Assembly: GCF_001194135.2 (NCBI RefSeq)
Contig: NC_068983.1
Coordinates: 25,006,523 to 25,062,658 of the forward strand
Origin: Octopus bimaculoides
Taxonomy: Eukaryota
Direction: 5' to 3'
Length of the DNA: 56,136 bases
Shown: piece by piece, positions 291 through 26,049 of the stretch
Layout of the letters: every line of letters begins with the position of its first letter
Position numbering within the stretch: the stretch's first letter is position 1
The notes under the pieces: generated by a model
Database searches by the model: none
What the model was told of the DNA's origin: nothing
What the model saw: the letters and a program-made list of their open reading frames with translations, nothing else
Program-made: the position numbers and the translations under genes

Positions 291-1263
291 CTACCTACCT
301 ACCTACCTACATGCCTGCCTGCCTACCTAACTCTCTGTCCGTCCGTCAGACCGTGTGTATGTATGTATGTATGTATGTATGTGTGTGTGTGTGTGTGTGT
401 GTATGATTGTTTTTNNNNNNNNNNNNNNNNNNNNNNNNNNNNNNNNNNNNNNNNNNNNNNNTTTTTTTTTTTTTCGTTGATTTGTAAATATTTTCTCTAG
501 GTTTCAAATTCCGCCAAGGTCGACATTACCTTTCATCCTTTCGGGGCGGGGGGTCGATAAATTAAGTACCAGTTGCGTACTGGGGTCGATCTAATTGACT
601 GTCGCCCTCTCCCCCCCAAAAAATTTCAGGCCTTGTGCCTAGAGTGGTAAACAATATTTTCTCTCGGTGAACAGAGCTTGTTACAAACATAGAAACAAAA
701 ACACCATCAACAACAATTATTGTGACTAAGAAAGTCTTGCCTGTTTTCTACTGTTCAACTTATGAAGTGTATCTGTAAAGTTCATGTTAGCCGATGTCTT
801 TCTTTTCTAGAAAATCTTAGCTTCACCAGGCTTCTTTCAGTTTCCGTCTACCAAATCCACTCACAAGGCTTTGGTTGGCCCGAGGCTATAGTAGAAGACA
901 CTTGCCCAAGGTGCCACACAGTGGGACTGAACCCAGAACCTTGTGGTTGGTAAGCAAGCTACTTACCACACAGCCAAGGAGCTCTTTTTTGTCAAAAATT
1001 AAGTTAAAAGAATATGGGAGTTTCTTATAAATGGATAGTATTATAATCTCTTACAAAATCTTTTTCTCAAGTTTTAAACCCCACAAATTAGGGGGTTTCT
1101 TATACATGTTAAAATACGGTAATTAACTGTTGCCTTTCATGCAAAAAAATATTCGACATTGCACTCGTGAATTATAATTATGATATTAGAAATTATTAAC
1201 TAAATGAAAAGAATTAGAAATTATTATTATAACTATTATTATTTTTATTATTATTATTATTAT

Positions 1264-1731
1264 TAAAATGGTGAGCTGGTAAAATCGTTAGCATGTTGGA
1301 CAAAATGCTTAGTGGTATTTCGCCCATCGCTACATCCTGAGTTCGAATTCCACAGAGGTTGACTTTGACTTTCATCTTTCTGGGGTTGATAAATTAAGTA
1401 CCAGTGAAACATTGGGGTCGATGTAATCGACTTAACCCCTCCCCCAAATTTTCTGGCCTTGTGCCTATAGTAGAAAGGATTATTATTATTATTATTAAAG
1501 CAGCAAGCTGGCAGAATCGTTAGCATGCCAGGAAAAATGCTTAGTGGTGTTTCATCTGTCTTTATGTTCTGAGTTCAAATTCCTCCGAGGTCGACTTTGC
1601 TTTCATCATTTCAGGGTCAATAAATCAAATACTAGTTGAGTACTGGGTTGATATAATCAACTTATCACTCCTCCCAAATTCCATGCCTTGTGCCTATAGT
1701 AGAAAGGTTTATTATTATTATTATTATTATA

Positions 1732-1766
<35 letters not shown>

Positions 1767-1990
1767 TAAAGTGGTGAGGTGGCAGAATCAGTAGTACACT
1801 GGGCAAAATGTTGAGGAGCATTTCATCTGTCTGTTTACTCTGAGTTCAAATTCTGCTGAAGTTGACTTCAAATTTCATTGTTTCAGGGTTGATAAAACAA
1901 GTACCAGTTGAACATTGGGGTTGGTGTCATTGACTTAGCCCCTCACCCTAAATTTCAGGCCTTGTGCCTATAGCAAAAAGGATCATCATC
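1264..1990 (+). mobile_element. Three head-to-tail tRNA-derived SINEs with a Nin/Deu-type core, separated by (ATT)n
   Basis: A/B-box-like head (GGCGAGCTGGCAGAATCG...GAGTTCAAATTCC), core GACTTTGCCTTTCATCCTTTCGGGGTCGATAAATTAAGTACCAG and tail CCTTGTGCCTATAGTAGAAAGG(ATT)n. Further copies near 500-650, 24283-24500, 27405-27600 (+) and 25640-26000, 42830-43215, 56040-56136 (-). Confidence 0.85.
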
Positions 1991-3752: not shown

Positions 3753-4800
3753 ATGTATGTATATATATACTATTTTAATATTTTAATATTTATTACTTTG
3801 TACTTTTTTGATTTTTATAATAGGTCTNNNNNNNNNNNNNNNNNNNNNNNNNNNNNNNNNNNNNNNNNNNNNNNNNNNNNNNNNNNNNNNNNNNNNNNNN
3901 NNNNNNNNNNNNNNNNNNNNNNNNNNNNNNNNNNNNNNNNNNNNNNNNNNNNNNNNNNNNNNNNNNNNNNNNNNNNNNNNNNNNNNNNNNNNNNNNNNNN
4001 NNNNNNNNNNNNNNNNNNNNNNNNNNNNNNNNNNNNNNNNNNNNNNNNNNNNNNNNNNNNNNNNNNNNNNNNNNNNNNNNNNNNNNNNNNNNNNNNNNNN
4101 NNNNNNNNNNNNNNNNNNNNNNNNNNNNNNNNNNNNNNNNNNNNNNNNNNNNNNNNNNNNNNNNNNNNNNNNNNNNNNNNNNNNNNNNNNNNNNNNNNNN
4201 NNNNNNNNNNNNNNNNNNNNNNNNNNNNNNNNNNNNNNNNNNNNNNNNNNNNNNNNNNNNNNNNNNNNNNNNNNNNNNNNNNNNNNNNNNNNNNNNNNNN
4301 NNNNNNNNNNNNNNNNNNNNNNNNNNNNNNNNNNNNNNNNNNNNNNNNNNNNNNNNNNNNNNNNNNNNNNNNNNNNNNNNNNNNNNNNNNNNNNNNNNNN
4401 NNNNNNNNNNNNNNNNNNNNNNNNNNNNNNNNNNNNNNNNNNNNNNNNNNNNNNNNNNNNNNNNNNNNNNNNNNNNNNNNNNNNNNNNNNNNNNNNNNNN
4501 NNNNNNNNNNNNNNNNNNNNNNNNNNNNNNNNNNNNNNNNNNNNNNNNNNNNNNNNNNNNNNNNNNNNNNNNNNNNNNNNNNNNNNNNNNNNNNNNNNNN
4601 NAGAGAGAGAGAGAGAGAGGCTCAGGAGTGGTTCATAGGCGCAAGAATGGCTGTGTGGTAAGTAGCTTGCTTACCAACCACATGGTTCCAGGTTCATTCC
4701 CACTGCATGGCACGTTGGGCAAGTGTCTTCAACTTCAACCTTGGGCCGACCAAAACCTTATGAGTGGATTTGGTAGATAGAAACTGAAAGAATCCCATCG

Positions 4801-5491: not shown

Positions 5492-5964
5492 TTACTTCTG
5501 TCCTGTGTGGTCTTATCATATTGGTGTGCAGGGAGAAATTTTTTTCGTGGAAGCAGCTAAAAAACATGGACACTACAGTGAAAATATACAACCAGCCTCC
5601 AACTCTTCTATTAATGTCAGTAAATCTAAACTTTCTCACAGCCAAGATAACAACTCTGACAGTCAAAGCCAAAACCTGTCCAGTTACTCAGAAAGTATTA
5701 ACACTTCAAAATTTGAAACTGACAAAAGTAAAAACCAAAGTGAAGTCTTCTTGTTGCCGGTACCTTGTGAGAAGAACTCTAGCGAACTCACTGATGTTGA
5801 ATATTTTGAGAAGCTCTTCGGAATTGTACTCTGCAGCTATAATGTCAAGTCAACTCTTGTGGAGAATACTGATGGCGATGAAAAGTATAGGGACAAGAAA
5901 AGGTTGATAGTACAGAAAGTAATAATTGGAAGCCAAGCACAGAGGTCACATAAGATACATAAAG
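5492..5964 (+). CDS. INTU: Inturned, first exon found (N-terminal motif, S/N/Q-rich linker, first half of PDZ)
   Basis: Acceptor tttctttcactag|T and donor AAAG|gtaatt; phase 2 in, phase 1 out. Encodes YFCPVWSYHIGVQGEIFFVE...FEKLFGIVL...KRLIVQKVIIGSQAQRSHKIHK(G). Resembles vertebrate INTU LEPEWLDSVQKNGELFYLE and the PDZ start (recalled from memory, not aligned). Confidence 0.9.
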
Positions 5965-7679
5965 GTAATTTGGTTGTTGTTATTTCAGAATCATGTTTCC
6001 ATTTAGACACGACACCATTATTGACATTGTGGGTTAACAGAGTAGAGAAGGAATATTTCCTCTAAATTTACTATAGCTGAAAAGGGCGTGAACGTTGCCA
6101 GGGCCGCTCACTGACCTCCGTGCCGGTGGCATGTAAAAAGCACTATTCGAGCATGATCGTTACCAGTGGCATGTGTAAAACAACATTCTAGCGAGGTCGT
6201 TGCCAGTGCCACTGGACTGGTTCCTGTCCAGGTGACATGTTAAAGACACCATTTGAGCATGGCCATTGCCAGTACTGCATGACTGGCCCTCGTGCCGGTG
6301 GCATGTAAAAGCACCCACTACACTCTCGGAGTGGTTGGCTTTAGGAAGGGCATCCAGCTGTAGAAACTCTGCCAGATCAGATTGGAGCCTAGTGCAACCA
6401 TCTGGCTTGCCAGTCCCCAGTCAAACCGTCCAACCCATGCCAACATGGGAAGCGGACGTTAAGCGATGATGATGATGATANNNNNNNNNNNNNNNNNNNN
6501 NNNNNNNNNNNNNNNNNNNNNNNNNNNNNNNNNNNNNNNNNNNNNNNNNNNNNNNNNNNNNNNNNNNNNNNNNNNNNNNNNNNNNNNNNNNNNNNNNNNN
6601 NNNNNNNNNNNNNNNNNNNNNNNNNNNNNNNNNNNNNNNNNNNNNNNNNNNNNNNNNNNNNNNNNNNNNNNNGTTCATGCAATTAAAAAGACAGCATTAT
6701 TTATGAGATGACCCAGGATATATATGCATGTATGTATGTATGTATGTATGTATGTATGTATGTATGTCTATATATATGTATCATCATCATCGTTTAACGT
6801 CCGCCTTCCATGCTGGCACAGGTGTAATACATAGATTTGCTGATATATATATATATATAAGTATGCTTACACACAGACACAGACACACACACACACACAC
6901 ACGTGTGTGTTTGTGTGAGTTTGTGTTTGTGTGAGTGTGTGTTTGTGTGAGTGTGTGTTTATGTGTGTTTTGGGTGTGTTTATCAATGCAAATATATGAA
7001 TTTATAACTATTACACATCATTTTTACTTATTTTTACCAATGTTTTCTTCTAAAATTACAAACATGAAATACTGAAATACTGAGAGCTAATATTACTTAA
7101 CTTCTTTGATCTATTTGTAATACAATACTTTTTCAGCTAACAATATTTCCATCTCATTAAGTTGCCTAAATTTTCATTTTTACTTTGATGTTGCGATTTA
7201 ATTAAATATTACATTTCTCATTCGTAGAGCAAGAGTTCTTTCCCTTGTCCCATATTAAACCATTTCGGCAGGAATCTTCATTTTCATCGCCATCATAGTC
7301 TTCATCATGAAAATATATACTGTTTTTTGTATTAAATAATTTTCACCAAATATTCAATTAATCAACAAAGTTTCCAATAATAACAAACAAAAAACGTAGT
7401 TTGTACCACAGTTATTGATATGATATATATCACTGAAATATTTTCAAGTTTTGGAAGCAATTAAAGACGATATAATTCTAAGAAAGATAGAAATGTAAAA
7501 TGAGGAAGAGAAGAAGGAGAAGAAGAAGAACAACAACAACAACAACATCAACAACAAAAGATGTCCATGCTGACCTATCTGACAAGCATCCTACAGACCA
7601 AAGCCAATCAATTTATGGCCCATGGATGAATCTACATATTGTCTATTGGCCAACCTACTATTCGAAGTATATTGTTATA

Positions 7680-7931
7680 GGCAGCGAGCTGGCAGAATCG
7701 TTAGCATGCTGGGCAAAATGCTTAATGGTATTTCGTCTGTCTTTATGTTCTGAGTTCAAATGCCACTGGGGTGGGCTTTGTTTTTCATCATTTTGGGGTT
7801 GACAAAATAAAATAAGTACCAACCAGTTGAGTACTGGAGTTCATGTCATCAACTTACCCCATTCCCTGAAATTCCTGGCCTCATGCAAAAAATTGACACT
7901 ATTATTATTATTATTATCATTATTATTATTA

Positions 7932-7970
<39 letters not shown>

Positions 7971-8259
7971 TTTATTATAATAAGGTGGTGAGCTGGCAGA
8001 ATCGTTAGCATGCCAGTTGCAATGCTTAGCAAATATTTCACTTGTCATTACGTTCTGTGTTCAAATTTTGCCAAGGTCATCCTTACCTTTCATCCTTTTG
8101 GGATTGATAAATTTAGTACCAGTGAAACACTGGGGTTGATGTAATCGACTAGTCCCCTCCCTACAAATTTCAGGCCTTGTGCCTTTAGTAGAAAGGATTA
8201 TTATTGTTATTATTGCTGTTGTTGGTATTGTTTTCAAATGTTGGCATGGGACCAGCAAC

Positions 8260-8305
<46 letters not shown>

Positions 8306-8774
8306 ATTATTATTATTATTATTAATCAGAATTGTTAGCATGCTGGCTGAAATGCTTAGCATTATTTTGCCTGCTGCTTTGTTCTCAGTTCGAATTCTGC
8401 CGAGGTTGACTTAGCCTTTCATTCTTTCAGGGTTGATAAATTAAGTACCAGTTACATACTGGGGTTGATATAATCAACTGCTCCCTCCCCACCCACAAAA
8501 ATTGCAGGCCTCCTGCCTACAGTAGAAAGGATTATTATTATCATTATTAAAGTGGTGAGCTAGCAGAATTGTTAGCACGCCAGGCAAAATGCTTAGTGGC
8601 ATTTTGTCTGTCTTTACATTCTCAGTTCAAATTCCCCTGAGGTCAACTCTGCCTTTCATCCTTTTGGGGTTGGTGAAATAAGTACCAGTTAACTACTGGG
8701 CTCGATGTAATTGACTATCCCCATCCCACAAATTTCAGGCCTTATCCGTATAGTAGAAAGGATTATTATTATTA

Positions 8775-8805
<31 letters not shown>

Positions 8806-9660
8806 AAGTTTACTTCCCAATCACAGGATTCTGGGTTCAGTCCCATGACATGGCTTCTTGAACAAGTGTCTTTTACCAACAGAATAAGAACCTGGCGGTG
8901 AGCTGGCAGAAACATTAGCATGCCGGGCGAAATGCTTAGCGGTATTTCGTCTGCCTCTACGTTCTGAGTTCAAACTCCGCCGAGGTCAACTTTGCCTTTC
9001 ATCCTTTCAGGGTCGATTAAATAAGTACCAGTTATGCACTGGGGTCGATATAATCGACTTAATCCATTTTTCTGTCCTTGTTTGTCTCCTCTGTGTGTAG
9101 CCCCTTGTGGGCAGTAAAGAAATAATAAGAATCTGGCTTTAAAAAAAAAGTATGACTGGGGTTGATTTATTTAACTTAAATTCTTCAAGGCAGTACCCCA
9201 GTATGGCCACAGTCTAATAACTAAAACAAGTATAAAATAAAAGATTATTACTAACATCCTTAGCTGGTAGAATTGTTAGCATGCCAGACAAAATGCTTAG
9301 TGGTATTTCTTCTTGTATTGCATTCTGAGTTCAAATTTTTCCAAAGGTCATCCTTTTGGTGGAGTCAATAAAATAATCCATGACCACCCCATCTTCTTAA
9401 TGGTACCTAAGACCACAACATCTAGTGTGTCCTTCTATTAATAACATTATTAACGGTGGTGGGCTGGCAGAACCATTAGCAGACCAGAAAAAATGCTTAG
9501 TGGAGTTTTGTTCATCTTTATGTTCTGAGCTCAAATTCTCCTGTAGTTGACTTTGCCTTTCATATTTTGGAGATTGATAAAATAAGTACCAGTTAAGTAC
9601 TAGAGATGATGTAATTGTCTTTGTTTCCCCTCAGAAACTACTAACCCTGCACCAAAATTT
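7680..9660 (+). mobile_element. Cluster of about 7 same-orientation Nin/Deu-core SINEs with (ATT)n spacers
   Basis: Copies start near 7680, 7981, 8325, 8547, 8894, 9260 (partial) and 9455. Confidence 0.85.
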
Positions 9661-9708
9661 TAAACCAGATGAATACTCTCCCAAAATTTCAGTGTATGTG
9701 GCATGTAA

Positions 9709-10147
9709 TGATATATTACTAGCAATTGATGATAGAGAGAGGGGTCACCCTTTTCATAATCACTATAAAATTTATGTATATGTTCTTTCTCCAGGTGATA
9801 AAAAGCGGGTAACCTTTTCACAACCGCTATATAATTAATGTGTATGTTCTTTCTCAAGGTGTTATGTTACTAGCAGTTGATGATAGAGAGAAGGGTCACC
9901 TTTTTGAAGTCACTATATAATTATTGTATATGTTCTTTTTCCAAGTGGTACGTTGCTAGCAATTGATGATAAAGATTGGTGTCACCTCTTTACGATCCCT
10001 ATGTAATTAATGTATTTGTTCTTTCTCCAGGTGATATGTTGCTAGCAATTGATGACAGAGAGAAGGGTCACCTTTTCGCAATCACTATATAATTAATTTA
10101 TATGTTCTTTCTCCAGGTGATATGTTGCTAGCAATTGATGACAGAGA
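9709..10147 (+). repeat. 86-bp tandem minisatellite made of the 3' splice site plus the first ~31 nt of the INTU PDZ exon
   Basis: Units at about 9709-9794, 9795-9858 (22-nt deletion), 9859-9944, 9945-10030 and 10031-10116. The final partial unit is the real exon start. Confidence 0.93.
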
Positions 10148-10202
10148 AGTCTCTTGGAGTAAATTAGGAACAACCTTGAAGAGTCTCAAGAAACAAGTTC
10201 CA
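10117..10202 (+). CDS. INTU: Inturned exon, second half of PDZ (86 nt)
   Basis: ttctttctccag|GTGAT...GTTCCA|gtaaga; phase 1 to 0. Encodes (G)DMLLAIDDREVSWSKLGTTLKSLKKQVP, the PDZ GD-x-h-h-A-h-D/N motif. Not in the ORF track. Confidence 0.9.
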
Positions 10203-10517
10203 GTAAGAATTAGTAATTTCTCTAAAATCATTTTTCTGCTTTTGAAATTCATTATTGCTTAATATGCTAAGGCAGCTTCACTAAATAAATATTCTTTTAT
10301 AATTTTACTTGTTTTATTATTTATTGGGCTGTGGTCATGCTAAAGCATCAACTTAAAGGGTTCAGTTGAACAAATTGAACCCAGTATATACTTTCAGTCA
10401 GGTAATTATTGTCTTTGTTTATTTTTCGTGAACCCCTAAATTACTGAGATGTAAACAAACCAACACTAGATGCGCAAATCATAATAATGAATGCACATAC
10501 ATACATACATATGCATG

Positions 10518-10565
<48 letters not shown>

Positions 10566-11467
10566 TAGGGTAAAGGTTCCCTTTGGTCATGAATGACAAT
10601 GGGATTGCTCTTAGAAAGTTCCCCTCTGTGGTACAAACCCAGGCAAGGTTGATTATGGAAGACCAGCAGTCACCTAAGCATACCAGTCTTCCCCTTCCAC
10701 CCCACTGATGATAACATTTATCCAAGGAAAAGGCAAAGGCCGATACAGCTTGGCACAAATGACATCGCAACTCATTTCTACAGTCGAGTGAACTGGAGCA
10801 ATATAAAATAAAATGTCTTGCTGAAGAACACAATATACAACTCAGTTTGGGAATTGAACTCACTACCTCATGATTGTGAACCTGATGTTTTAACCACTGG
10901 GTCATGCACCTTCACACACACATACACATATATGTAATATAAAACCAGACTATGGAACTTGGTGTGGGCTTAGCCTTGACAGTTCTTGTCAAGTCATCCA
11001 ACCTATGCCATCATGGATGTGCTTGGATGTGCTTTTAATGTTCCACTGGCATGAGTGCCAATTAGGCATATATATTTATACATATGTGAAAAGTTTCTTT
11101 TAGTTTCATCCATCGGATCAATTCATGAGGCTTTGGTCAGCTGGGGACTATAGAAGAAACTTGCCCATGGTACCATGCAGTGGGACTGAACCTGAAACCA
11201 TGTAGTGAGAAGCAAGCTTCTTATCACATAGTCATGCTGCTTCTATCTACAAGATATTTCAGTATCAAATAAACTAGATGGAAATCAACGCTCTTAGTGT
11301 TACAGCATAAAGATGCCCTTTTTTGTCACCAACCCTTATCTGTTTCTAAGAAACCCTGTCGGCTAACCCATTAAGAAAAAGCAAAGCCCACATAAAAGTG
11401 TGCTTAATCTGGGGCTATACAAATATATGATTATAAAAATATTTTTTCTTTTATAACTATTTTACAG

Positions 11468-11674
11468 ATTAAACTCACTTTTCAAAATCCTGTTGTTGTT
11501 GGATCTACAAATCACAACTCTGTTGGTGGAATGCGGTTACCATTTTGTGAAAATGTCATGCTGGCTGCTAGTGGCGAAGATTTCTCATCATTGGTAGAGC
11601 TGCTTGACATGTACAAATGCAAACTCTTATGTCTTTCGCTGGACATTGTTCAAAGTGATTTAGATTTTGGTCAG
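11468..11674 (+). CDS. INTU: Inturned exon (PDZ end and linker, 207 nt)
   Basis: ttttacag|ATT...CAG|gtaaag; phase 0-0. Encodes IKLTFQNPVV...KLLCLSLDIVQSDLDFGQ (compare INTU VKLTFEN). Confidence 0.9.
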
Positions 11675-12344
11675 GTAAAGAATATTTGTAGCTATATTAT
11701 TTCTGACACAAATTCACTTTCATGTTATTGTTGTTGATTTTTATATATATATGGATATATTCACGTAGGTATGTATATCTTTTATCTCTTATATTTATTT
11801 GTTCCAATCAATAGACTGTGGCCATGCTGGGACACTGCCTTGAAGAATTTTAGTCAAATGGATTGACTCTAGTAATTAATTTTTTTTTTTTTTTTTGGTT
11901 TTTAAGTGTGGTTCTATTGGTTTCTTTTACTGAACTGCTAAGTTACAGGAACATAATTATGCTGACACCAGTAGTCAAATGGTAGTTGAGGACAAACAGA
12001 CATACAGAGACAAACACACACTCACACATGCACATTAATATGGTGGGCTTTTTGCCATTTCTGTCTACCATATCCATTCACAAGGCTTTGGTCAGCCCAA
12101 GGCTGTAGTAAAAGAAACTTGCCCAAGGTGCCACACAGTGGGACTGAATCTGGAACTATGAAGTTGGAAGTCAAATCTACTACATATGTGGGAAATTCTG
12201 TCTGTGGGTGTGTTTGTGGAGATATTAGCTAACTATTCCTACATCATTTTATCGACTTTTATGAAGCTTAACATGTGAATAGAATTCCTGTCTGGAAACC
12301 TCATGGCATACTCAGATTGTTGAAAAAAATCGATAATAGGGTCT

Positions 12345-13272
12345 CAGTCACTTGTCATCTGCTCTGTGAGGCCCAACATTCACAGGTCATGCTTCACCAC
12401 CTCATCCCAGATCTTCCTGGGTCTACCTCTTCCACAGGTTCCCTCTACTGCTAGGATGTGACACTTTTTCACACAGCTGTCCTCATCCATATGCAACACA
12501 TGACCATACCAGTGCAGTCATCTCTCTTGCACACTACATCCGATGCTTCTTAAATCCAACTTTTCTCTCAGGGCACTTATGCACTGTTATGTACGCACAG
12601 TGACATTACACGTCCAGCAGAGCATACTAGCTTAATTTGTTGCAAGCTTACGCATGTCCTCAGTAGTCACAGCCCTTGTTTCATGCCCATGTAGCATGGC
12701 TATTTGCACACATGCGTCATACAATCTACCTTTTACTCTGAGCGAGAGGCCCTTTGTCACCAGCAGAGGTAGGAGCTCTCTGAACTTTGCCCAGACCATT
12801 CTTATTCTAGCAGCTTCACTTTCAGAGCATCCACCCCTGATACTGACTTGGTCCCCTAGGTAACAGAAGCTATGAACTACTTCTAGTTTTTCCTCCTGTC
12901 ATGTGACAGAAGCTGTTCTTTGCACATTTTCAGTGTTTATTGCACCTGAGCATTTGCCACATACAAAAACTATCTTTCCAGTTAGCCTTCCTTTGATATT
13001 GCTGCACCTCTTATGTGTCCATAGCTTACACTGGGTAGATATTATGGAGTTTCTACCTATGCCTTTTCTACAGATTGAGCAGGGCCATCTACCTGAATGG
13101 ATTTGTGGTTTGTCTGCCTTCCTACTTATTAAGACTTTGGATTTAGCTAAGTTGACTTTCAGGCCCTTCGATTCTAATTCTTGCTTCCACACCTGAAACT
13201 TTTCCTCTAGTTCTGATAGTGATTCAGCAATTAGACCAAGGTCATCAGCATAGAGAAGCTCCCAGGGGCATC
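12345..13272 (-). mobile_element. RTE-clade LINE, 5'-truncated, RT C-terminal part with a PHD-like Cys/His insert
   Basis: PWELLYADDL (RT YADD), GLKVNLAKSKVL, FCYLGD, ARIRMVWAKFRELLPLL, LHWYGHV and GRGRPRKIW motifs, with internal stops. Lacks the downstream 3' UTR. Confidence 0.92.
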
Positions 13273-13361
13273 CTATATATATATATATATATATATTGAT
13301 TGACTTTTGACTGAACACTATTCAATTTTTTTTCTCCGTGTTTTTCTCCTTGTCTCCGTAT

Positions 13362-13398
13362 TCTTTCTGTTGAAGAGCGTAGCTCGAAACGTCAAAGA
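13362..13398 (+). ncRNA. Minimal type I hammerhead ribozyme-like motif in a ~200-bp (TA)n-flanked element (Penelope-like or retrozyme)
   Basis: UCUUU-CUGUUGA-A-GAGC(GUA)GCUC-GAA-ACGU-C-AAAGA: 5-bp stem I, 4-bp stem II, palindromic ACGU stem III, GUC triplet. Core has A6U. Confidence 0.6.
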
Positions 13399-13488
13399 CT
13401 TTCCGTATTCCCGAGCGTCATACTAATATATACTTTTGTTATTTACACCACCTGTCCTCGTCTGTTGTTATTATTTGTATATTCTCCC

Positions 13489-13547
<59 letters not shown>

Positions 13548-14620
13548 TTCTCTACCACCACTTAACAACCCCCATAACTTACCAGTTCAGCAAAAGAGAT
13601 CAATAGAACAAGTTCTAGGCTTAAAAAAAAAAGGTACAGGGACTAATTAATTTGACTAAAAATTCTACAAGGCAATGCCCCAGTATGGCTGCTGTATAAT
13701 GACTGAAACAAACAGAAGATAAAAGATAAAAGATAGTAAATATATCCAATATAATCGTTGAAATAATAATAAAAAAAAACAAACTGTGACAGTATGTTAT
13801 CTAGTTAAACTTTTGCAATGGATTCCTCCTCCTCTTCCCCACTATCATCCTCATCATCCTCATCACCACAAGCATCATTTTAATGTTTACTATTTCATGC
13901 CTGGTTGAGTCAGACAGAATTCATTGAAGCAGATCTTTTACAGCTGGATACTCATCCTGTTCTCAACCTTCACTTATTTCAAAGTAACTTGATATATATT
14001 TTGCTAGACAATTGCAAATAAACATCATTTACACAATTTCTATGATGGCAATGTTTAAATTTAGCACATAATGCCAAGTTAAGGTGACATACACTCCCAC
14101 GCTCACACCCACATGTGCATACTTACACACGTGTGTGTGTGTGTGTATGTATTTACAGACACACAGACACACACACGTTTATACATATATCTATATCTAA
14201 CTGTCTATCTATATATCTAATGTCATCATCATCATCATCATCGTCGTTTAACTTCCGCTTTCCATGCTAGTATGGGTTGGACGATATTTGACTGAGGACT
14301 GGTGCAACCGGATGGCTACACCAGGCTCCAATCTGATTTGGCAGAGTTTCTACAGCTGGATGCCCTTCCTAACGCCAACCACTCCGAGAGTGTAGTGGGT
14401 GCTTTCACGTGCCACCGGCATGAAGGCCAGTCATGCGGTACTGACAACGGCCATGCTCAAAATGGTGTATTTTACGTGCCACCTGCACAGGAGCCAGTTC
14501 GGCGGCACTGACAATGATCTCGCTCGAATGTCTTTACACATGCCATCCGGCACAAAAAGGTGTTTTGTATGTGCCACCTGCACAGGAGCCAGTCCAGCGG
14601 CCCTGGCAATGACCTCGCTC

Positions 14621-14659
<39 letters not shown>

Positions 14660-14953
14660 TGTGTGTTTGTAAATCTCTCTTTCTCTGTATATGTATAAAT
14701 CTATATGTGACTACTTTCCAGTTTATGATGACAAAAGTCAGACATAAAGCTTCGGTTGCCCTGGGTCCTCTACCACCCTACTCTCATTATTCTCACTACC
14801 CCAGCAGCTGCCAGCACTACCATTTTCCTCCTCCTCCTCCTCTTCCTCGTCATTGTCATTAACAGCAGCAATTATTGAAGAAGAGGAATAAATTATTGTG
14901 AAATTATTCAGGAAATTAAGTTTACTTATTTTTTGTATTTTATTATTTCACAG

Positions 14954-15063
14954 GAGATCATATATGAGTTTCCATTCCATAATGATAAAGTCAGTCATGT
15001 GAGAGGAATGTTCATCACCCTGAATAAAGTACTAGAAGAAATTGTTCAAAGCCAAACACAGTG
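14954..15063 (+). CDS. INTU: Inturned exon (start of first longin region, 110 nt)
   Basis: tatttcacag|GAG...CAGTG|gtaagt; phase 0 to 2. Encodes EIIYEFPFHNDKVSHVRGMFITLNKVLEEIVQSQTQ (compare INTU LKSVRGIFLTL). Confidence 0.92.
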
Positions 15064-15109
15064 GTAAGTATATAATATATATATATACATAATATATATA
15101 TATATACAT

Positions 15110-15285
15110 AGGCGCAGGAGTGGCTGTGTGGTAAGTAGCTTGCTTACCAACCACATGGTTCCAGGTCAGGTTCAGTCCCACTGCATAGCACTTTGGGCAA
15201 AGTGCCTTTTACTACAACGTCAGGCCAACCAAAGCCTTGTGAGTGGATTTGGTAGACGGAAACTGAAAGAAGCCCGTCGTATATA
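15110..15285 (+). mobile_element. tRNA-derived CORE-like SINE (copies near 826-975 -, 4640-4800 +, 11085-11240 -, 12040-12180 -, 41335-41500 -)
   Basis: GGCGCAGGAGTGGCTGTGTGGTAAG...GGTTCAGTCCCACTGC...TTGGGCAAGTG...GATTTGGTAGACGGAAACTGAAAGAAGCCCG(TA)n; TTGGGCAAGT resembles the CORE domain. Confidence 0.8.
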
Positions 15286-15369
15286 TGTATATATATACGA
15301 CGGTGCTCCAGCATAGCCGCAGTCAAATGACTGAAACAAGTAAAAGAGTAAAAGAGTAAAAGAGAATAT

Positions 15370-15412
<43 letters not shown>

Positions 15413-15949
15413 ATATGTGTGTGCATGTGTATCTCTCTAAATATGTGTATATATGTGTGTGTGTTCATTATTATATATGTTTATATACTAAATTTTCAAA
15501 TAACTTTTCTTCATTCTTAAGACTTGTAACGATTTCCTGCTTTTTAATTTCTAATTTTATACTTTTAATTAATTTATTATTATTTTTTTACCTGTGGTTT
15601 ATATTTCAAATTAATTTTTATTGGATTTTTTTTTCTCTAATTTTTCACTAACTTCTCCTCTCTCCCTGAAATTGCAGCTTTTCTCTGATTTTGTTCATAC
15701 CTTCCTTCCATGCAAAGCATCCAGCACCCATACACTTGCATTCACTTCTAGCACCACCTCCACATTCTCCCTTTTCTTCACACTCACACCTGCTCCTAAC
15801 TCCTCTCCTGTATCCTTTCTACACATATATATATAACAGTTACACACACATAACAATATTTCAGGTTCGTTCTCTCCAATGCCACTATACTTTTGAAATT
15901 GCACTCTTCTTCATACTACTTCCCTCAAAAAAATTCCACGCAAGACCTT

Positions 15950-16695
15950 CGAACATTGGGCCTCACCGAGGCGATGACTACTGACCGAGACCTTTGGAAA
16001 TGTCCTGTGCATGAGAAGATCTGGCAAGCCAAGTGAGACCTAAATTCAAGGCCTCTGCCAGGGGTGTAGCCAGCCCACTTATGCGTACTTTTCCTACATT
16101 GGACACTAAACTCCGCTTGTGAAGACTTGTTGAAGCAAGTGAAATCGAACTAAATTCGACGACTGGCACCCGTGCCAACGTCGTCTCCTTCATTGTACAC
16201 GAAACTCAGCTTGCAAAGACTNNNNNNNNNNTCGACGACTGGCACCCGTGCCAACGTCGTCTCCTTCATTGTACACGAAACTCAGCTTGCAAAGACTTAT
16301 TGGGGCAAGCGAAAGCGAAATCGGGATAGCACCTGTGACCAGAGTCACCTTTCTGGTACTTGTGCCCGTGACATGTATAAGGATTTTCGAGCGAGATCGT
16401 TGCCAGTGCCCCTGGACTGGCTCTTGTGCAGGTGGCACATAAAATACACCATTTTGAGCGTGGCCGTTGCCAGTACCGCCTGACTGGCCTTCGTGCTGCT
16501 GGCACGTAAAAGCACCCACTACACCCTCAGAGTGGTTGGCATTAGGAAGGGCATCCAGATGTAGAAACTCTGCCAAATCAGATTGGAGCCTGGTTTTGCC
16601 ATCCAGTTTCACCAGTCCTCAGTCAAATCGTCCAACCCATGCTAGCATGGAAAGCGGACGTTAAACGATGATGATGATGATGATGATGATGATGA
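15950..16695 (+). mobile_element. 3' end (ORF tail plus 3' UTR) of the same RTE family, with (GAT)n tail
   Basis: 15955-16000 matches the ORF end of the 12.3-13.3 kb copy (GLTEAMTTDRD vs GLTEQMTSD*D). It continues into internal ~50-bp repeats, AGGAAGGGCATCCAG and CCATGCTAGCATGG...GTTAAACGATGATG. Confidence 0.8.
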
Positions 16696-17364
16696 TCACT
16701 CACCCTATATACCTGTCGCCAAACATAGATGCACACCTATGCTTGCATTTACACACCCACTCCTTCACGTTTAACTTCTTCATAGAACAACATTCCCAAC
16801 TGGCTCCGAAAATTTTCACCTGTATTTTTTAACAGCTTTTGATCTTTCTCACACATTCTACGGTCACTCTGTCTCCTGTTGACGGGGGTAATATCCATAA
16901 TGTTAAGACACTTTGCTTTTTTAAATGTTAGATTAATATTATGTTTGTTAAACTCTTTCTGTGCTGCTTTGTCTTTTTTATTTCTCTTATGGTACTACAG
17001 CAACGGTACTGGATATTAATAGTTATCGCCAAGCTAACATGGCAGTCCAGAAAAATAGGACAAATGCTATCATTGATTAGCTCCATGAGGCGGTGGCCTC
17101 TTGGAGCTAATCGACAGCACCATTCGTCCTATTTTTCGTTTAATAGTTAATTACAAGTATACTTTTATTCCTATTTAATAAATTTAATGTTTGTATTAAG
17201 CGAAAACACCTAAAGCTCCATGAGTCACCGGCAGGGGCTGTATTTCAAGCAACCAGCCTTGCTACACACTGTCACGCTGAATCTTGCTAAGAAATACATA
17301 AAAGATACATGTCTGTGGTGTGCTCAATAAAATAAGTTTCTGCTGAGTTCTGGGATCGATGTAA

Positions 17365-18345
17365 TCATCTATCCATTTTCCATAAAATGTGCTAAAATTG
17401 TGCTAAAATTTGGAAATATTATATGGGCATAGCTTTTCATGTAAGTTAGGGAAATCCTAGTAACTATCTGTAGTAAGATAACATTTCTTAAACCTTCTTT
17501 GTGGTAACTGATAGATTCAGCAATACTAAACCTTTCAAACATATTAATGATTTGCTTAATCACTTGTGAAATTTAGCTTTATAAGAAAAAAAAAAGAGAT
17601 ATATAAAAATGTTTGCATAGTATTTTCCTGAGATATCATTAGGTAAAATGATTGGTAAACACTGTTGGGAGTGGTCCCTCTTAGCAAGTTGAGTGAGCAC
17701 TTGCATTTGCTAACTCTGGTTTTGTATATATGGCTTATATAATAAAACAAGATTAAAGCATTTTTCTTTTTTTACTTGCAGTCTATTTTGATTAGATATA
17801 CCCAATATAACCTATTTGCTTATTGCTATGTAAGTGCATGACTATCCTTTGACTTCTCTGCTATGAGATTTTTAAAATTTTCATTTGATATTCTTTAATT
17901 ACCCAAGCTTAACCAGATTCTTACGTTCTGACGATAACTTTCATCACTCACTTTGAATTACTCAAAGATAACAGCCAAGGTCATGCAAGTTAAGAAAATT
18001 TTAATTGCTTCAATCAAAAGCTAATGTAGTTGATAGTGAAAGCAATAGAACTTCATCTATTCATGGTTTCATTTAAAACTATATTTTTACAAGTTTCATC
18101 TACATTAAAGATTCATTTATTGAATAATTTTATCACATAATTAAAAATAAGATAAAATTACACCGGAATCTGAACTTTGATAGTCTTGAATTCTTTGAAA
18201 TAAGTATAAGCTGAATATACTTGACTCTTTTAATATCGATTGTTTGTAAACATGAAGTCTTGGCTTCTGTCTTTTAAAATGATTATGGAAAATGAAGATT
18301 CCAGAATCACTTTTAGATCTAATCAAATAATCGTTCAATTTCATC
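17365..18345 (-). mobile_element. Decayed pogo/Tigger-like DNA transposase
   Basis: Minus strand shows IFNVDET (about 18089-18112, the pogo DDE motif), upstream FHNHFKR, and downstream IFPNFSTILAHFMENG (compare FLPPNTTSLLQPMDQG). Many stops. Confidence 0.5.
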
Positions 18346-18538
18346 CTTCATTGCACCAATCTATTTTTCTAAACAAACAACTGGAAAAGTCTCAATAACA
18401 TTAACTGAAACTACTTAATTGCATACAAAATAATTAACTGGTTGTTATAACACAGATTTACTGTTATAAGTTTTTCCATACATCATTCTGAGACACCTGT
18501 GTCACATCATCAGTGAAGCTTTCTTGGGTCATTGGGTG

Positions 18539-18597
<59 letters not shown>

Positions 18598-18600
<3 letters not shown>

Positions 18601-18819
18601 GAAGGTGGTGAGCAGGCTGAATCGTTAGCACGCTGGGAAAAATGCTTAGCGGCATTTCGTCCGTCTCCTACGTTCTGAGTTCAAATTCCGCCCGAGGTCG
18701 ACTTTGTCTTTCATCCTTTCCGGGTCGATAAAATAAATACCAGTTGACGAACTGGGGTCGCTGTAATTGACTCATCCCCTCCCCCAAAATTGCTGCCCTT
18801 GGGGCAAAATTTGAAACCC

Positions 18820-18872
<53 letters not shown>

Positions 18873-19100
18873 GTCAAGACGGCAGTGAGCTGGAAGAATC
18901 GTCACCGTGCCGGCGGGCAAAATGCTTAGCGGCATTTCGTCCGTCTCCTACGTTCTGAGTTCAAATTCCGCCCGAGGTCGACTTTGCCTTTTATCCTTTC
19001 GGGGTCGATGAAATAAGCACCAGTTGAACACTGGGGACGATGTAATCGACTAACCCCGCTTCCCCCGAATTGCTGGTTTTGTACCAAAATTTGAAATCAT
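18598..19100 (+). mobile_element. Tandem pair of Nin/Deu-core SINEs in (ATT)n
   Basis: Two copies offset by 280 bp, each preceded by a long (ATT)n tract. Confidence 0.85.
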
Positions 19101-19193
19101 TATCATCACCACCACCACTACCCCCCACCCCCCACCATCATCATCATCAATATTATTACGGTGAAGCAATATCCCCTTGTATCTATTTTGCAG

Positions 19194-19283
19194 TTCAAAC
19201 TTGGTGTACCATCATCAGTTGATCAACGTATCATATTACAAAGACGACAACAGTACCCTTTTGTTAGTGCTGCCAACAGATTT
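19194..19283 (+). CDS. INTU: Inturned exon (90 nt)
   Basis: tattttgcag|T...GATTT|gtaagt; phase 2-2. Encodes (C)SNLVYHHQLINVSYYKDDNSTLLLVLPTD (compare [27 protein letters not shown]). Confidence 0.88.
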
Positions 19284-21663
19284 GTAAGTTTCGATATTCT
19301 ATCATTCATTTCGTCTTACGTTAATTAATGAGTTAATTGGATATATAATTAATTAATTATTTGATTAACTTTGTAATTAATTAATTCATCAATTAGCTAT
19401 ATAATTAATTAATTCATATATTCTGCCATTTTCACTACCAGCATTGTTTTCTTGGGACTGTCGAATATATCTAATTATTCCACAGAAAGTCTATTTGTTT
19501 TAAATACTCACCCCAGCATATGTTTATATATATGTATGTATGTATCTGGGTAATATAAGTGTAAATACACACACACACGCGCACAGTGGGATATAGAGAG
19601 AGAGTTTTGTAGGATCAATTAAAAAAGCCCAAAACCCCCTAAAACCATGCACTCAATTCAACTATAATGAATTAATAATCATTTAATAAATACAGGCGTT
19701 ATGAGTGAGCTGCTGAAGGTATCATACGAGAAACGTTTAATATTCTTCTTCCTTTCTTATATCTGAAATTAGGTGTTCTGTGTACAATCCAGCGATCATT
19801 GAAGCCCTTGTAATATAGCTACTCAATGAGAATGTACGAGAATACATGTGAAAAAAGAAGAAACGTTCAAACCTAAATGAGGATAATCCTGTTCTTGGAA
19901 GCTAGGATAGTGTTTAATTATCACATGAAGATTTGTTAGAAAATGTTCTACATTTAAAGGAAGAATATTGCTAATATTAAGTGCATATGGCTAAGAGTGA
20001 CGTAATGAGTTTTATATTTGTGAATATATGAGTCAGTATTGAACATGGAAGTTTACAGTCTTAATTTATAGTATAGAGAGAATGTCAAAATCCAGGGCTA
20101 GCACTTGAATAGGCGAATGGCTAATTTGTATCGAACTTCGTGAGAGGGAGGGCTTTTCAGTTTGATAAAAGAAATTTGTCTAGATACATACATCTCATTA
20201 AAATCTCTGATCTCGAGTTTAGATAGTCAGTGATATCCTTCAACTTAATTAATATGTGTACGGAGTTTGAACGCAGAAGGTAATGCTAGAAGAAATGCTG
20301 CTAAGAATTTTATTCATCTTGCTGACGATGAAAAATAGACTTATAATAAAAATACCAAGGAAGAAGTAAATGAGAACGTAAGAATGGGATGCAAAGGAAT
20401 TATAATAAATAGGTAATTAATGTGCCAGTGATGATAGGGTGTGTATGCATATTTGGTGAGGTGAACTTTATATAAGACTTTGCCTCTCCAAAGCATTTTC
20501 ATAAATTTGCCCTAAACGTCCATTCTTGTTTTTAGACTGTTATTTAGCCCATGTTTCATACGTTCAGAGTAATATAAAGCTTTCCTTTGATAAGTTCCAA
20601 GTTACTCTGTGGTTGAAAAAGCTTGAGATTGTGCATCATATATGATGCATGGAAGTTTCTTTGTATATCACTCATGACACACAGGAGAAGCAAAGGGTTA
20701 AAATTAATATCATGAAGTTATTTTTCTGGGATTTGAATGGGATGGTAGTTATATTTCAAACCACTCCAATATGGATATATTCCAAAGGGTTGCGTGATGC
20801 GGATAAAAATAGCTTCTTTTGAGAACATTTTTGAATAATCATTAATAATTATATTAAATTTTCAGTTGGTTAGATTTATCGTCAAGTTTTATAGTTCTGA
20901 ATTGTATAGAAAAATCTACTTTATAAGTATTTGCCAAAATCTTAACAGTGATCAGTATTCGTTGCTTATAAACTCACGAATCTATTTATCGAAACCCACC
21001 TAACGATATATAATTTAAATTTAGCATTAATCTTAAAGCTAATTCTAACCCTTAATATGATCTAATACTTCTAAGTCAAAATCGGAAAATCTGGATTAAA
21101 ACCGAACAGTAGGAAAACCGACACGCAATTGCATATCTAACAAGACAATGGAGGTAGCAGGGAAAGTGTCACTTCATGGCGATATAAAGGATGAAGCTTT
21201 AATTAGGAGAATTCTGTGAGCTGGAGATTATATAAAACAATAAAAGGAAGGACAGAAGAATCGAGAAAAGGAGAATGTAGGAAAGGACAAACCTTGAAGA
21301 AGAGACGTCGTTATCTACATAGTTTTTATATCTTCAGCAAATGGGGGACAGTGAAAACTGTGAAACTGATTTAAAATAGAAATTAACCCTTTCAATTGGC
21401 TACAATGAATCAGGCAAAGTTGTTTATCTATAATTAAATGTAGTGTTATAAATAAACCTAGTTATATAACTATTTAACTATTTAAGTTCTATATCTATTT
21501 AATGTAGAAAACATTAAGAGCTGATATGCACCTACACATACACACATATCCTTTCATTGGCCCTCAACTCTTGATATAATATGGTGTATCTAGGGTGCCT
21601 AAGCCTGATGGGGCCCGTCCCTCTTGAGATCTGATTAAAGCTGATTCTTTCAGAAGTGAGTTA

Positions 21664-21697
<34 letters not shown>

Positions 21698-24600: not shown

Positions 24601-24733
24601 GTGTGTGTCTGTGTGTGTTTGCAAATATATATATTTATGTATATATATATTTCTTGCTTGTAAACTGAAATGGCGAAATCAAAGCATTCAGCGCCTTGAA
24701 ATGAAATCAGTATATATATATATATATATATAT

Positions 24734-25638: not shown

Positions 25639-26049
25639 CAACTGGTACTTATTTTATCGATTACGAAAGGGATAAAAGGCAAAGCCAACACCGGCGGAAT
25701 TTGAATTCAACGTCAAGTTGGAATAAATGCCGCTAAGCATTTTCCCGGCGCAGTAATGATTCTACCAGCTCATCGCCTTAAGGAATATGACAATAATGGT
25801 TTCAAATTTTGGCCCAAGGACAGCTATTTCGGGGCAGGGACTAGGTTGATTACATTGACACCAGTGCCAACTGATACTTATTTTATCGACCCCGAAATGG
25901 ATGAAAGACAAAATCGACTTCAGCAGAATTTGAATTCAGAGCGTAATGACGGATAAAATGCCGCTAAGCGTGCTAAAGATTCTACCATCTCACCGCCTTA
26001 AGGAATATGATAATATCAACATTAAGTGTAGCAGCTCTTGGACTTGTGA

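What the first reader, a model, noticed from the sequence alone, without database searches (positions are those of the whole stretch)
9709..10147. Tandem array of duplicated splice acceptors in front of an essential PDZ exon
An 86-bp unit (first ~31 nt of the exon, spacer, branch-like TAATTAAT, polypyrimidine tract, CAG) repeats about 5 times directly upstream of the real acceptor at 10115-10116. Decoy AGs lie at 9793-94 (CAG), 9857-58 (AAG), 9944-45 (shifted AAG) and 10029-30 (CAG). The nearest decoy has the same tgttctttctccag acceptor and an identical first 31 nt. Using it reads GDMLLAIDDREKGHLFAITI then TAA at 10090-10092, which would truncate the PDZ and probably trigger NMD. Distal units are more diverged than the proximal one, suggesting growth next to the exon. 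The array may be a built-in, copy-number-variable unproductive-splicing switch for a ciliogenesis gene.
Basis: partly seen in the sequence, partly recalled or inferred. Interest (0 to 1): 0.8.

Follow-up and report, generated by a model that had tools for sequence, protein, structure and literature searches.

The report
Repeated decoy acceptors in octopus Inturned
An 86-bp piece spanning the end of an intron and the first 31 bases of an exon of the octopus Inturned (cilia/planar-polarity) gene has been copied head to tail, leaving four spare splice acceptors in the intron. The array is real, old and absent from cuttlefish, but nothing available shows it is more than a tolerated duplication.

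Summary
Window 9709-10147 is a degenerate tandem array (period 86; five acceptor modules, five copies of the exon's first 31 nt) abutting the 86-nt PDZ exon (10117-10202) of Octopus bimaculoides Inturned. The array is local, lies in an 18-kb gap-free contig, and its units differ by 12-25%, so it is not a collapse or duplication artefact and it is old. The cuttlefish orthologue has the same 86-nt exon and the same CAG|GTGATAT start, but one acceptor and no repeat, so the array arose in the octopod lineage. Predicted proteins of three Octopus species, and a cuttlefish mRNA for its own single acceptor, show the productive junction. Best reading: serial tandem duplication of a segment straddling the intron-exon junction, tolerated because the last copy stays attached to the exon body. 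The "copy-number-variable unproductive-splicing switch" is untested: no octopus RNA-seq, population data or second octopod locus was reachable. Two oddities keep a functional reading alive: a 45-nt perfect identity between the nearest decoy junction and the real one, and better-preserved splice signals than spacers. Interest is modest.

The parts
5492..5964 (+). Upstream Inturned coding exon (473 nt). It ends in phase 1 (...ATAAAG|gtaatt) and encodes ...VIIGSQAQRSHKIHK(G), the start of the PDZ domain.
   Evidence: Sequence. tblastn with cuttlefish INTU P0003. Identical to O. bimaculoides XP_052822677.1.
5965..10116 (+). Intron of 4152 nt. Its last 408 nt are the array. A SINE copy at about 9436-9633 lies 75 nt upstream of the array.
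9709..9794 (+). Unit 0: exon-head copy (9709-9739) plus acceptor module (9740-9794). It has TTTAT at -20, the tract tgttctttctccag, and CAG at 9792-9794. Using it gives GDKKRVTFSQPLYN* (TAA at 9836).
9795..9858 (+). Unit 1: 64 bp, with the head mostly lost to a 22-bp deletion. The acceptor module has TTAAT at -20 and a weakened AAG at 9856-9858. Using it gives GVMLLAVDDREKGHLFEVTI* (TAA at 9918).
9859..9945 (+). Unit 2: 87 bp. It has a 1-nt insertion (ttccaAG), no yUnAy motif within 50 nt, and the following head has lost its GT (TGGTAC). Using it gives VVRC* (TAG at 9957).
9946..10030 (+). Unit 3: 85 bp. This is the nearest decoy acceptor, with TTAAT at -20, tgttctttctccag and CAG at 10028-10030. 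Its spacer is the most diverged of all (78% to the real tail).
10031..10061 (+). Copy of the exon's first 31 nt, identical 31/31 to 10117-10147. It is part of the 45-nt exact repeat 10017-10061 = 10103-10147. Read from the decoy, it runs into TAA at 10090-10092.
10062..10116 (+). Real acceptor module. It has the branch-point-like TTAAT (A at 10096, 20 nt from the AG), the pyrimidine tract TGTTCTTTCTCC, and AG at 10115-10116. There is no other AG in the preceding 50 nt.
   Evidence: The junction is used in XP_052822677.1, XP_036356853.1 and CAI9719251.1.
10117..10202 (+). PDZ exon, 86 nt, phase 1 to 0. It encodes (G)DMLLAIDDREVSWSKLGTTLKSLKKQVP. Its donor is CCA|gtaaga.
   Evidence: The cuttlefish orthologous exon is also 86 nt.
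11468..11674 (+). Next Inturned exon (207 nt), encoding IKLTFQNPVVVG...DLDFGQ. It completes the PDZ domain.

Best explanation
The array is a degenerate minisatellite. It was made by serial tandem duplication (replication slippage or unequal exchange) of an 86-bp segment that straddles an intron-exon junction of Octopus bimaculoides Inturned. The segment comprises the last 55 nt of the intron (branch-point-like TTAAT, pyrimidine tract, CAG) and the first 31 nt of the 86-nt PDZ exon.

Such a duplication leaves the coding sequence intact. Only the last copy is joined to the rest of the exon, and the earlier copies simply become extra intron. The mRNA is made from the last acceptor (shown at the level of gene models). 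That acceptor is the only one followed by the purine-rich exon body and a donor 86 nt away (the exon-definition advantage is inferred).

The four upstream copies are pseudo-acceptors:
- Two have decayed (CAG to AAG, a 1-nt shift, loss of the branch motif, a 22-bp deletion).
- Two are still intact in their core.

Any use of them would yield stop-containing transcripts, expected to be removed by NMD or re-spliced. The array is therefore a tolerated by-product, not a dedicated switch (inferred).
For: - The array is real and local.
- Each unit is intron tail plus exon head. The tail is unrelated to the rest of the exon (13/55 ungapped matches, alignment score below the shuffle mean), so this is not a whole-exon duplication.
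- The cuttlefish Acanthosepion pharaonis locus L005 has the same 86-nt exon, the same phase and the same cag|GTGATAT start. It has a single acceptor and no tandem repeat within 14000-17500. Its mRNA contig L006 confirms the exon borders.
- Predicted proteins of O. bimaculoides, O. sinensis and O. vulgaris all read ...HKGDMLLAIDDREVSWSKLG.TLKSLKKQVPIKLTFQ, which is the junction 5964>10117.
- Units differ by 12-25% from each other. That is as much as introns differ between O. bimaculoides and another octopod (12-19%). The array has therefore persisted for a long time in a conserved single gene.
- Two of the four decoys carry disabling changes.
- Arrays with period 30 or more cover about 2.5% of the non-N bases of this 100-kb locus. 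A junction falling inside one is not in itself improbable.
- There is no unusual RNA structure (z = -0.45).
Against: - No RNA data for octopus were reachable, so use of the decoys is unknown. Gene models show only the major product.
- Two decoys keep a core identical to the real acceptor. Neither sequence nor exon length (172 nt) obviously excludes the nearest one.
- A 45-nt tract across the nearest decoy junction is identical to the real junction, while the 41 nt just upstream differ at 12 positions.
- Among the decoys, the branch-like and pyrimidine-AG columns vary less than the spacer (7/27 vs 16/30 variable columns, p = 0.058; 13% vs 34% pairwise).
- Both patterns could reflect selection on the decoys rather than gene conversion.
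- A comparable duplication of a donor junction in human FGG is a null allele (PMC9052919), so such duplications are not automatically harmless.
Confidence: 0.6

Rival explanations
1. One reading: the decoys are functional. The array would be a built-in unproductive-splicing (AS-NMD) or decoy device that sets Inturned dosage, possibly tunable through copy number.
For: - All decoys give premature stops at least 110 nt upstream of the exon's 3' end.
- Two decoys are indistinguishable from the real site over 20 nt, and the nearest one over 45 nt.
- Splice-signal columns of the decoys are less diverged than spacers.
- The array is old yet not fully decayed.
- Decoy splice sites that hold introns back are a known mechanism (PMC6097662, PMC7373989).
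Against: - There is no RNA evidence, no population data and no second octopod locus.
- The conservative column test is not significant (p = 0.058).
- Half of the decoys are damaged.
- 12-25% divergence between units speaks against rapid copy-number turnover.
- Inturned is not an RNA-binding protein, so there is no obvious feedback loop.
- Short-tract gene conversion from the constrained real junction explains the 45-nt identity equally well.
Confidence: 0.15
2. The array is self-correcting. Every intact unit boundary is AG|GT (CAG|GTGATA at 9794/9795, 10030/10031 and 10116/10117; AAG|GTGTTA at 9858/9859). A splice to a decoy would rebuild a donor (AAG|GTGATA) that can be re-spliced to the next acceptor 64-86 nt downstream. 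Whole units would then be removed as mini-introns. This follows the Rogers tandem-duplication intron logic and recursive splicing, and would make decoy use harmless.
For: - The boundary sequences can be read directly.
- Each unit carries its own yUnAy motif at -20 and a pyrimidine tract.
- Tandem duplications containing AGGT are spliced out in human cells, with a minimal intron of about 60 nt (PMC3265369).
- Exons that begin with a donor-like sequence can be recursively spliced (PMC6224609, PMC8605326).
- The real donor of the upstream exon also lacks G at +5 (GTAATT).
Against: - GTGATA is a weak donor (no G at +5), and it is fixed by the conserved Gly-Asp codons. It is also present in cuttlefish, which has no array.
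- The same rebuilt donor at the real exon would cause exon skipping if it were efficient.
- Known recursive sites sit in very long introns, not within 400 nt of the exon.
- The unit 2/3 boundary has lost its GT.
- There are no lariat or junction data.
Confidence: 0.1
3. The array is an assembly artefact of the short-read draft.
For: - The window is a gap-rich scaffold with 13 runs of N.
- The only other copy reachable, GCA_001194135.2, is the same sequence and not an independent assembly.
Against: - The array sits in an 18-kb gap-free contig, 6673-24733.
- Units differ by 12-25% and by indels. Artefactual duplication or haplotype doubling does not produce that.
- The longest exact repeat is only 45 nt.
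- At most, identical extra units could have been collapsed, which would make the copy number an underestimate.
Confidence: 0.03

Closest known systems
Tandem genomic duplication containing AG|GT (Rogers model; Hellsten et al. 2011, PMC3265369; Drosophila cases, PMC2891723)
   Same: A head-to-tail duplication places AG|GT at each copy boundary. The redundant copy can be removed from the transcript so the protein is unchanged.
   Different: Here the duplicated segment already spans an existing intron-exon junction. No new intron is needed, because the copies simply extend the old intron. There are also five copies rather than two.
[quoted passage not shown]
   Same: The duplication covers a splice site together with part of the exon. 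The duplicated site competes with the original and gives frameshifted transcripts.
   Different: The FGG case duplicates a donor, is recent, has identical copies and is a null allele. The octopus array duplicates an acceptor, is old and diverged, and is evidently compatible with a working gene.
Unproductive splicing (AS-NMD) through poison alternative 3' splice sites or exons
   Same: An upstream alternative acceptor would add sequence with an in-frame stop more than 50 nt before the next junction.
   Different: Known cases are defined by observed isoforms, regulation (often autoregulation by splicing factors) and strong conservation. None of these could be tested here.
Decoy exons that promote intron retention (Parra et al. 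2018, PMC6097662; PMC7373989)
   Same: Intronic, non-productive splice sites could engage the splicing machinery near a real site.
   Different: Decoy exons are single cryptic exons deep in introns longer than 1 kb and are defined by measured intron retention. Here there are repeated acceptor modules abutting the exon, and retention is unknown.
Recursive splice sites / RS-exons (PMC6224609, PMC8605326)
   Same: An acceptor and a donor-like sequence are juxtaposed: (Y)n CAG|GTGATA.
   Different: The donor half is weak, the intron is only 4.2 kb, the sites are clustered at its 3' end, and the motif is dictated by Gly-Asp codons.
Tandem exon duplication arrays (e.g. 14 copies of an 18-nt exon plus intron in mouse Csn1s1, PMC3048548)
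   Same: A unit containing exon and intron sequence is amplified in tandem inside a gene.
   Different: There whole exons with both splice sites are repeated and included in mRNA. Here only the first 31 nt of the exon are repeated, and every copy reads into a stop.

Membership tests
Junction-spanning tandem duplication (minisatellite) | Head-to-tail direct repeats with a constant period | tested here: met
   TRF gives period 86, 3.7 copies, score 444. The repeat finder gives spacing 64, 86, 86, 86.
Junction-spanning tandem duplication (minisatellite) | The unit contains both intron and exon sequence from either side of one splice site | tested here: met
   The unit is a 55-nt intron tail plus a 31-nt exon head. 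The head is 84-100% identical to the real exon start. The tail is unrelated to the exon remainder.
Junction-spanning tandem duplication (minisatellite) | Absent from an outgroup that has the same junction | tested here: met
   Cuttlefish L005 has an 86-nt exon at 15843-15928, one acceptor and no repeat.
Junction-spanning tandem duplication (minisatellite) | Copy number polymorphic among individuals | not testable with these tools
   Only one assembly of O. bimaculoides was reachable. Its ORFs are not on record in the read-assembly index.
Unproductive splicing switch (AS-NMD) | The alternative site introduces a stop more than 50-55 nt upstream of a downstream exon junction | tested here: met
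   The stops lie 110-364 nt before the exon's 3' end for all four decoys. This is in silico only.
Unproductive splicing switch (AS-NMD) | The alternative junction is observed in RNA and stabilised when NMD is blocked | not testable with these tools
   No octopus transcript contigs were found. Gene models show only the productive junction.
Unproductive splicing switch (AS-NMD) | Alternative sites conserved beyond neutral expectation | tested here: inconclusive
   Signal columns vs spacer among the decoys: 7/27 vs 16/30 variable, p = 0.058. There is a 45-nt exact tract. No second octopod locus was reachable.
Decoy exon (intron-retention type) | A cryptic exon flanked by an acceptor and a donor inside the retained intron | tested here: inconclusive
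   Complete units are bounded by AG and by a GTGATA or GTGTTA donor-like sequence. The donors are weak.
Decoy exon (intron-retention type) | Measured retention of the host intron that depends on the decoy sites | not testable with these tools
   No RNA data were available.
Recursive splice site | Juxtaposed acceptor and strong donor, (Y)nNCAG|GTAAGT | tested here: inconclusive
   CAG|GTGATA occurs at three boundaries. It matches at -3 to +4 but not at +5 or +6.
Recursive splice site | Lies within a very long intron and subdivides it | tested here: not met
   The intron is 4152 nt, and all the sites lie in its last 408 nt.
NAGNAG / short-distance tandem acceptors | Competing AGs a few nucleotides apart that share one branch point and pyrimidine tract | tested here: not met
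   The AGs are 64-87 nt apart, each with its own tract and its own AG-free zone.
Mutually exclusive / tandem exon duplication | The unit is a complete exon with an open frame and both splice sites | tested here: not met
   Only 31 of the 86 exon nucleotides are repeated, and every copy reads into a stop.
Inturned (INTU/PDZD6) gene family (host gene) | An N-terminal PDZ domain followed by three Intu longin-like domains | tested here: met
   The window exons are identical to O. bimaculoides 'protein inturned' XP_052822677.1. PDZ scores 23.7 bits on the spliced peptide. Intu_longin_1 (weak) and Intu_longin_2 are on record for this protein; Intu_longin_3 is not, because its modelled C-terminus departs from the orthologues. 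The cuttlefish orthologue has PDZ and all three longin domains. The top PDB hits are Protein inturned 7q3e_B and 9t1r_B, though weak at E = 0.13.

The most novel reading that the evidence does not exclude
The decoy acceptors are maintained by selection and the array is a working device. One possibility is a graded unproductive-splicing or decoy array that sets Inturned dosage. The other is a chain of self-excising 86-nt mini-introns (AG|GT at each boundary) that makes acceptor choice error-tolerant. The 45-nt perfect identity at the nearest decoy junction, and the better-kept branch and pyrimidine-AG segments, would then be footprints of that function.
Probability: 0.15. Interest if true: 0.6.

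Novelty: new member of a known kind. Interest (0 to 1): 0.3.

Why it matters
If it is only a tolerated duplication, it is a tidy natural counterpart of the classic duplicated-splice-site experiments. Three acceptors with the same 20-nt core lie within 322 nt, and only the last one can produce the protein. That makes the locus a convenient test of how exon context decides between otherwise equal 3' splice sites in a cephalopod, and of how such duplications survive in a conserved gene. If the decoys are used or maintained, it would be an unusual repeat-encoded way to throttle or buffer expression of a ciliogenesis and planar-polarity gene. It does not open a long-standing question on present evidence.

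Tried and rejected
- **Whole-exon duplication, prompted by period 86 = exon 86.** Rejected: the tail is unrelated to the last 55 nt of the exon.
- **Dispersed repeat or SINE origin.** Rejected: the unit has no other copy in the window. The SINE upstream ends at about 9633.
- **Further decayed units upstream of 9709.** None found.
- **Structured RNA.** The fold is no better than shuffles (z = -0.45). There are no Rfam hits in the array.
- **Comparative DNA from other octopods.** The O. sinensis and O. vulgaris gene ranges (155 and 201 kb) are too long for DNA to be returned. Logan contigs of an unnamed octopod cover only the upstream exon.
- **Protein-word searches.** Searches with the exon ORF, and with a six-frame composite of the array, found no called ORFs.
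- **Exact look-ups of four window ORFs over the array and of the upstream exon ORF.** Nothing is on record, so O. bimaculoides read assemblies are not indexed and these negatives say nothing.
- **Metagenome scan for the exon head.** 0 hits.
- **The chromosome-level O. bimaculoides record.** It turned out to be the same sequence as the window, so it gives no independent check.
- **Literature search for tandem repeats of splice acceptors.** No direct precedent found.

Full report
**What is in the sequence**

Tandem Repeats Finder reports one array at 9827-10147 with period 86 (3.7 copies, 81% matches, score 444). It also reports it with period 172 (88%, score 511). The ungapped repeat finder extends it to 9709. 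It resolves five copies of an acceptor module (starts 9740, 9804, 9890, 9976, 10062) and five copies of a segment that begins with the first 31 nt of the exon (starts 9709, 9860, 9946, 10032, 10118).

Cut at the AGs, the units are as follows:

| Unit | Coordinates | Length | Note |
|---|---|---|---|
| u0 | 9709-9794 | 86 bp | |
| u1 | 9795-9858 | 64 bp | 22-bp deletion of the head |
| u2 | 9859-9945 | 87 bp | |
| u3 | 9946-10030 | 85 bp | |
| u4 | 10031-10116 | 86 bp | tail is the real acceptor |
| exon | from 10117 | | |

The unit has no other copy in the 56-kb window. Nothing unit-like lies upstream of 9709. A SINE copy, one of about 19 in the window, ends about 75 nt before the array. No Rfam family matches the array, and the RNA fold is no more stable than shuffled sequence (z = -0.45).

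**The gene and the real exon**

The upstream exon (5492-5964) ends ...ATAAAG|gtaatt in phase 1. The exon at 10117-10202 is 86 nt and ends CCA|gtaaga. The next exon is 11468-11674.

Spliced together, these exons encode ...VIIGSQAQRSHKIHKGDMLLAIDDREVSWSKLGTTLKSLKKQVPIKLTFQ.... The evidence for what this is:
- It hits Pfam PDZ.
- Its best, though weak, PDB matches are Protein inturned, 7q3e_B and 9t1r_B.
- A search of protein representatives returned full-length molluscan proteins with PDZ plus Intu_longin_1, 2 and 3.
- tblastn with them maps ten exons of the 5' half of the gene on the + strand of the window.

Cluster look-up named the relatives: protein inturned of Octopus bimaculoides (XP_052822677.1), O. 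sinensis (XP_036356853.1), O. vulgaris (CAI9719251.1), and INTU of the cuttlefish Acanthosepion pharaonis.

The O. bimaculoides protein is identical to the window's exons. The chromosome record CM046603.1 of GCA_001194135.2 is 100% identical to the window, gaps included. So the window is O. bimaculoides, but that record is not an independent assembly.

All three Octopus models use the junction 5964>10117.

**The decoys**

Joining 5964 to each AG gives the following:

| Acceptor | Distance of stop from exon 3' end | Peptide | Stop |
|---|---|---|---|
| 9794 (CAG) | 364 nt | GDKKRVTFSQPLYN* | TAA 9836 |
| 9858 (AAG) | 282 nt | GVMLLAVDDREKGHLFEVTI* | TAA 9918 |
| 9945 (shifted AAG) | 243 nt | VVRC* | TAG 9957 |
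| 10030 (CAG) | 110 nt | GDMLLAIDDREKGHLFAITI* | TAA 10090-10092 |

By the usual 50-55-nt rule (my knowledge, vertebrate-derived), all four would be NMD substrates.

Four of the five modules have a yUnAy motif exactly 20 nt from the AG; unit 2 has none. All five have a long AG-free zone: the nearest upstream AG is 36 nt before the acceptor AG in unit 2 and more than 50 nt away in the other four.

The acceptors at 9794, 10030 and 10116 share tgttctttctccag|gtgata. By sequence, therefore, two decoys are as good as the real site and two are weakened.

**Age and origin**

Acceptor tails are 75-88% identical to one another and heads 78-87%. There is no gradient towards the exon: identity to the real tail is 86, 82, 88 and 78% from distal to proximal.

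Introns flanking the upstream exon differ by 12-19% between O. bimaculoides and an unnamed octopod recovered from Logan assemblies. The array's copies therefore began to diverge on a similar time scale. Such diverged copies, with indels, in an 18-kb gap-free contig cannot be an assembler's invention. At most, identical units may have been collapsed.

The 55-nt tail shows no similarity to the last 55 nt of the exon. The unit is therefore intron tail plus exon head, not a copy of the whole exon, even though period and exon length are both 86.

The cuttlefish genomic locus (L005) and an mRNA contig (L006) show the same 86-nt exon with the same cag|GTGATAT start. There is one acceptor and no tandem repeat nearby. 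The array is therefore derived within the octopod lineage.

**Most likely explanation (confidence about 0.6)**

A segment straddling the junction was duplicated in tandem several times. This is neutral for coding capacity, because only the last copy remains joined to the exon body.

The last acceptor is the only one followed by the purine-rich remainder of the exon and by a donor 86 nt away. Under exon definition, and given the distance-dependence of exonic enhancers (my knowledge: Berget 1995; Graveley et al. 1998), it should be favoured. This step is inferred.

Occasional decoy use would be cleared by NMD. Long persistence in a conserved single-copy gene shows that the cost is small.

Arrays with period 30 or more cover about 2.5% of the non-N bases of this locus. 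A junction inside one is therefore not in itself remarkable.

**What does not fit neatly**

- The nearest decoy junction is identical to the real one over 45 nt (10017-10061 = 10103-10147), whereas the 41 nt just upstream differ at 12 positions.
- Among the four decoys, the branch-like and pyrimidine-AG columns are less variable than the spacer columns: 13% vs 34% in pairwise counts, and 7/27 vs 16/30 variable columns, p = 0.058.

Short-tract gene conversion from the constrained real junction would explain both patterns, and so would selection on the decoys. With five related copies, the test has little power.

**Rivals**

The anatomy allows it and decoy mechanisms exist (PMC6097662, PMC7373989). 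However, nothing shows use, regulation or copy-number variation, and the divergence between units argues against a fast VNTR.

(b) Self-correction (about 0.1). Intact unit boundaries are AG|GT, so a splice to a decoy rebuilds AAG|GTGATA, which could be re-spliced to the next acceptor. This follows the Rogers/Hellsten duplication-intron logic (PMC3265369) and recursive splicing (PMC6224609, PMC8605326). Against it:
- The donor is weak.
- It is dictated by the Gly-Asp codons, which cuttlefish has too.
- It would also threaten the real exon.

(c) Assembly artefact (about 0.03).

**Comparison with known systems**

It works like a junction-spanning tandem duplication. The nearest analogues are:
- AGGT-containing duplications that create or extend introns.
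- Pathogenic duplications of splice junctions such as FGG (PMC9052919). That case shows such events can be null alleles, which makes the long survival here informative.

It fails the definitions of NAGNAG acceptors, whole-exon duplication arrays (mouse Csn1s1, PMC3048548) and classical recursive sites. Membership in AS-NMD or decoy-exon classes cannot be tested without RNA data. Literature searches found no described tandem array of complete acceptors in front of an exon. It is best filed as a new member of a known kind.

**Verdict**

- Interest is 0.3.

Noticed in passing
window 10117-10202 vs array period; L005 15843-15928: The repeat period (86 bp) equals the length of the PDZ exon (86 nt, also 86 nt in cuttlefish). 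The repeated tail is nevertheless unrelated to the rest of the exon. This is probably coincidence, but it is unexplained.
   Followed up: partly
window 10039-10048, 10125-10134 and the other head copies: The exon head carries a perfect 10-nt palindrome, TTGCTAGCAA, overlapping CAATTG. The cuttlefish exon lacks it. The predicted minimum-energy fold pairs neighbouring heads, but overall stability is not above shuffles. A role in slippage is conceivable.
   Followed up: partly
window 1249-1945, 7688-8145, 8380-9060, 9263-9337, 9436-9633, 18583-19046, 24294-24451, 25640-25969, 27412-27550, 42846-43475: There are about 19 copies (69-85% identical) of one SINE-like element, often with (ATT)n tails. 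One of them ends 75 nt upstream of the array.
   Followed up: partly
window 12899-13318 (-) and 35475-35864 (+): These are intronic retroelement fragments. The first has a reverse-transcriptase motif plus a PHD-like zinc finger. The second has a weak RVT_1 match.
   Followed up: partly
window 55673-55930; proteins P0029, P0030: Older O. bimaculoides gene models cover only part of this gene. XP_014772048.1 (409 aa) starts in the exon near 46060. A 179-aa entry reads through the donor at 55894 into the intron (...IVGQVCIKPFSFSID).
   Followed up: no
L004 (outside the window), C-terminus of XP_052822677.1: The current O. bimaculoides model ends ...KKKAFKIRIVRNFGLNS.... It has no Intu_longin_3 hit, unlike O. 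sinensis and O. vulgaris (...KKKANAKRKNPSRS...YIREHGVLFNC...). The last exons are probably mis-modelled or lie in an assembly gap.
   Followed up: no
window 10487-10609: Several sub-threshold Rfam microRNA-family matches fall on both strands of an (ACAT)n/(TA)n/(AC)n microsatellite. All are far below the gathering scores and are simple-repeat artefacts.
   Followed up: yes
window, 13 runs of N (e.g. 3828-4601, 24734-25638, 41526-42011): The chromosome-level record keeps the same gaps as the window. The locus has therefore not been re-sequenced with long reads in that assembly.
   Followed up: yes
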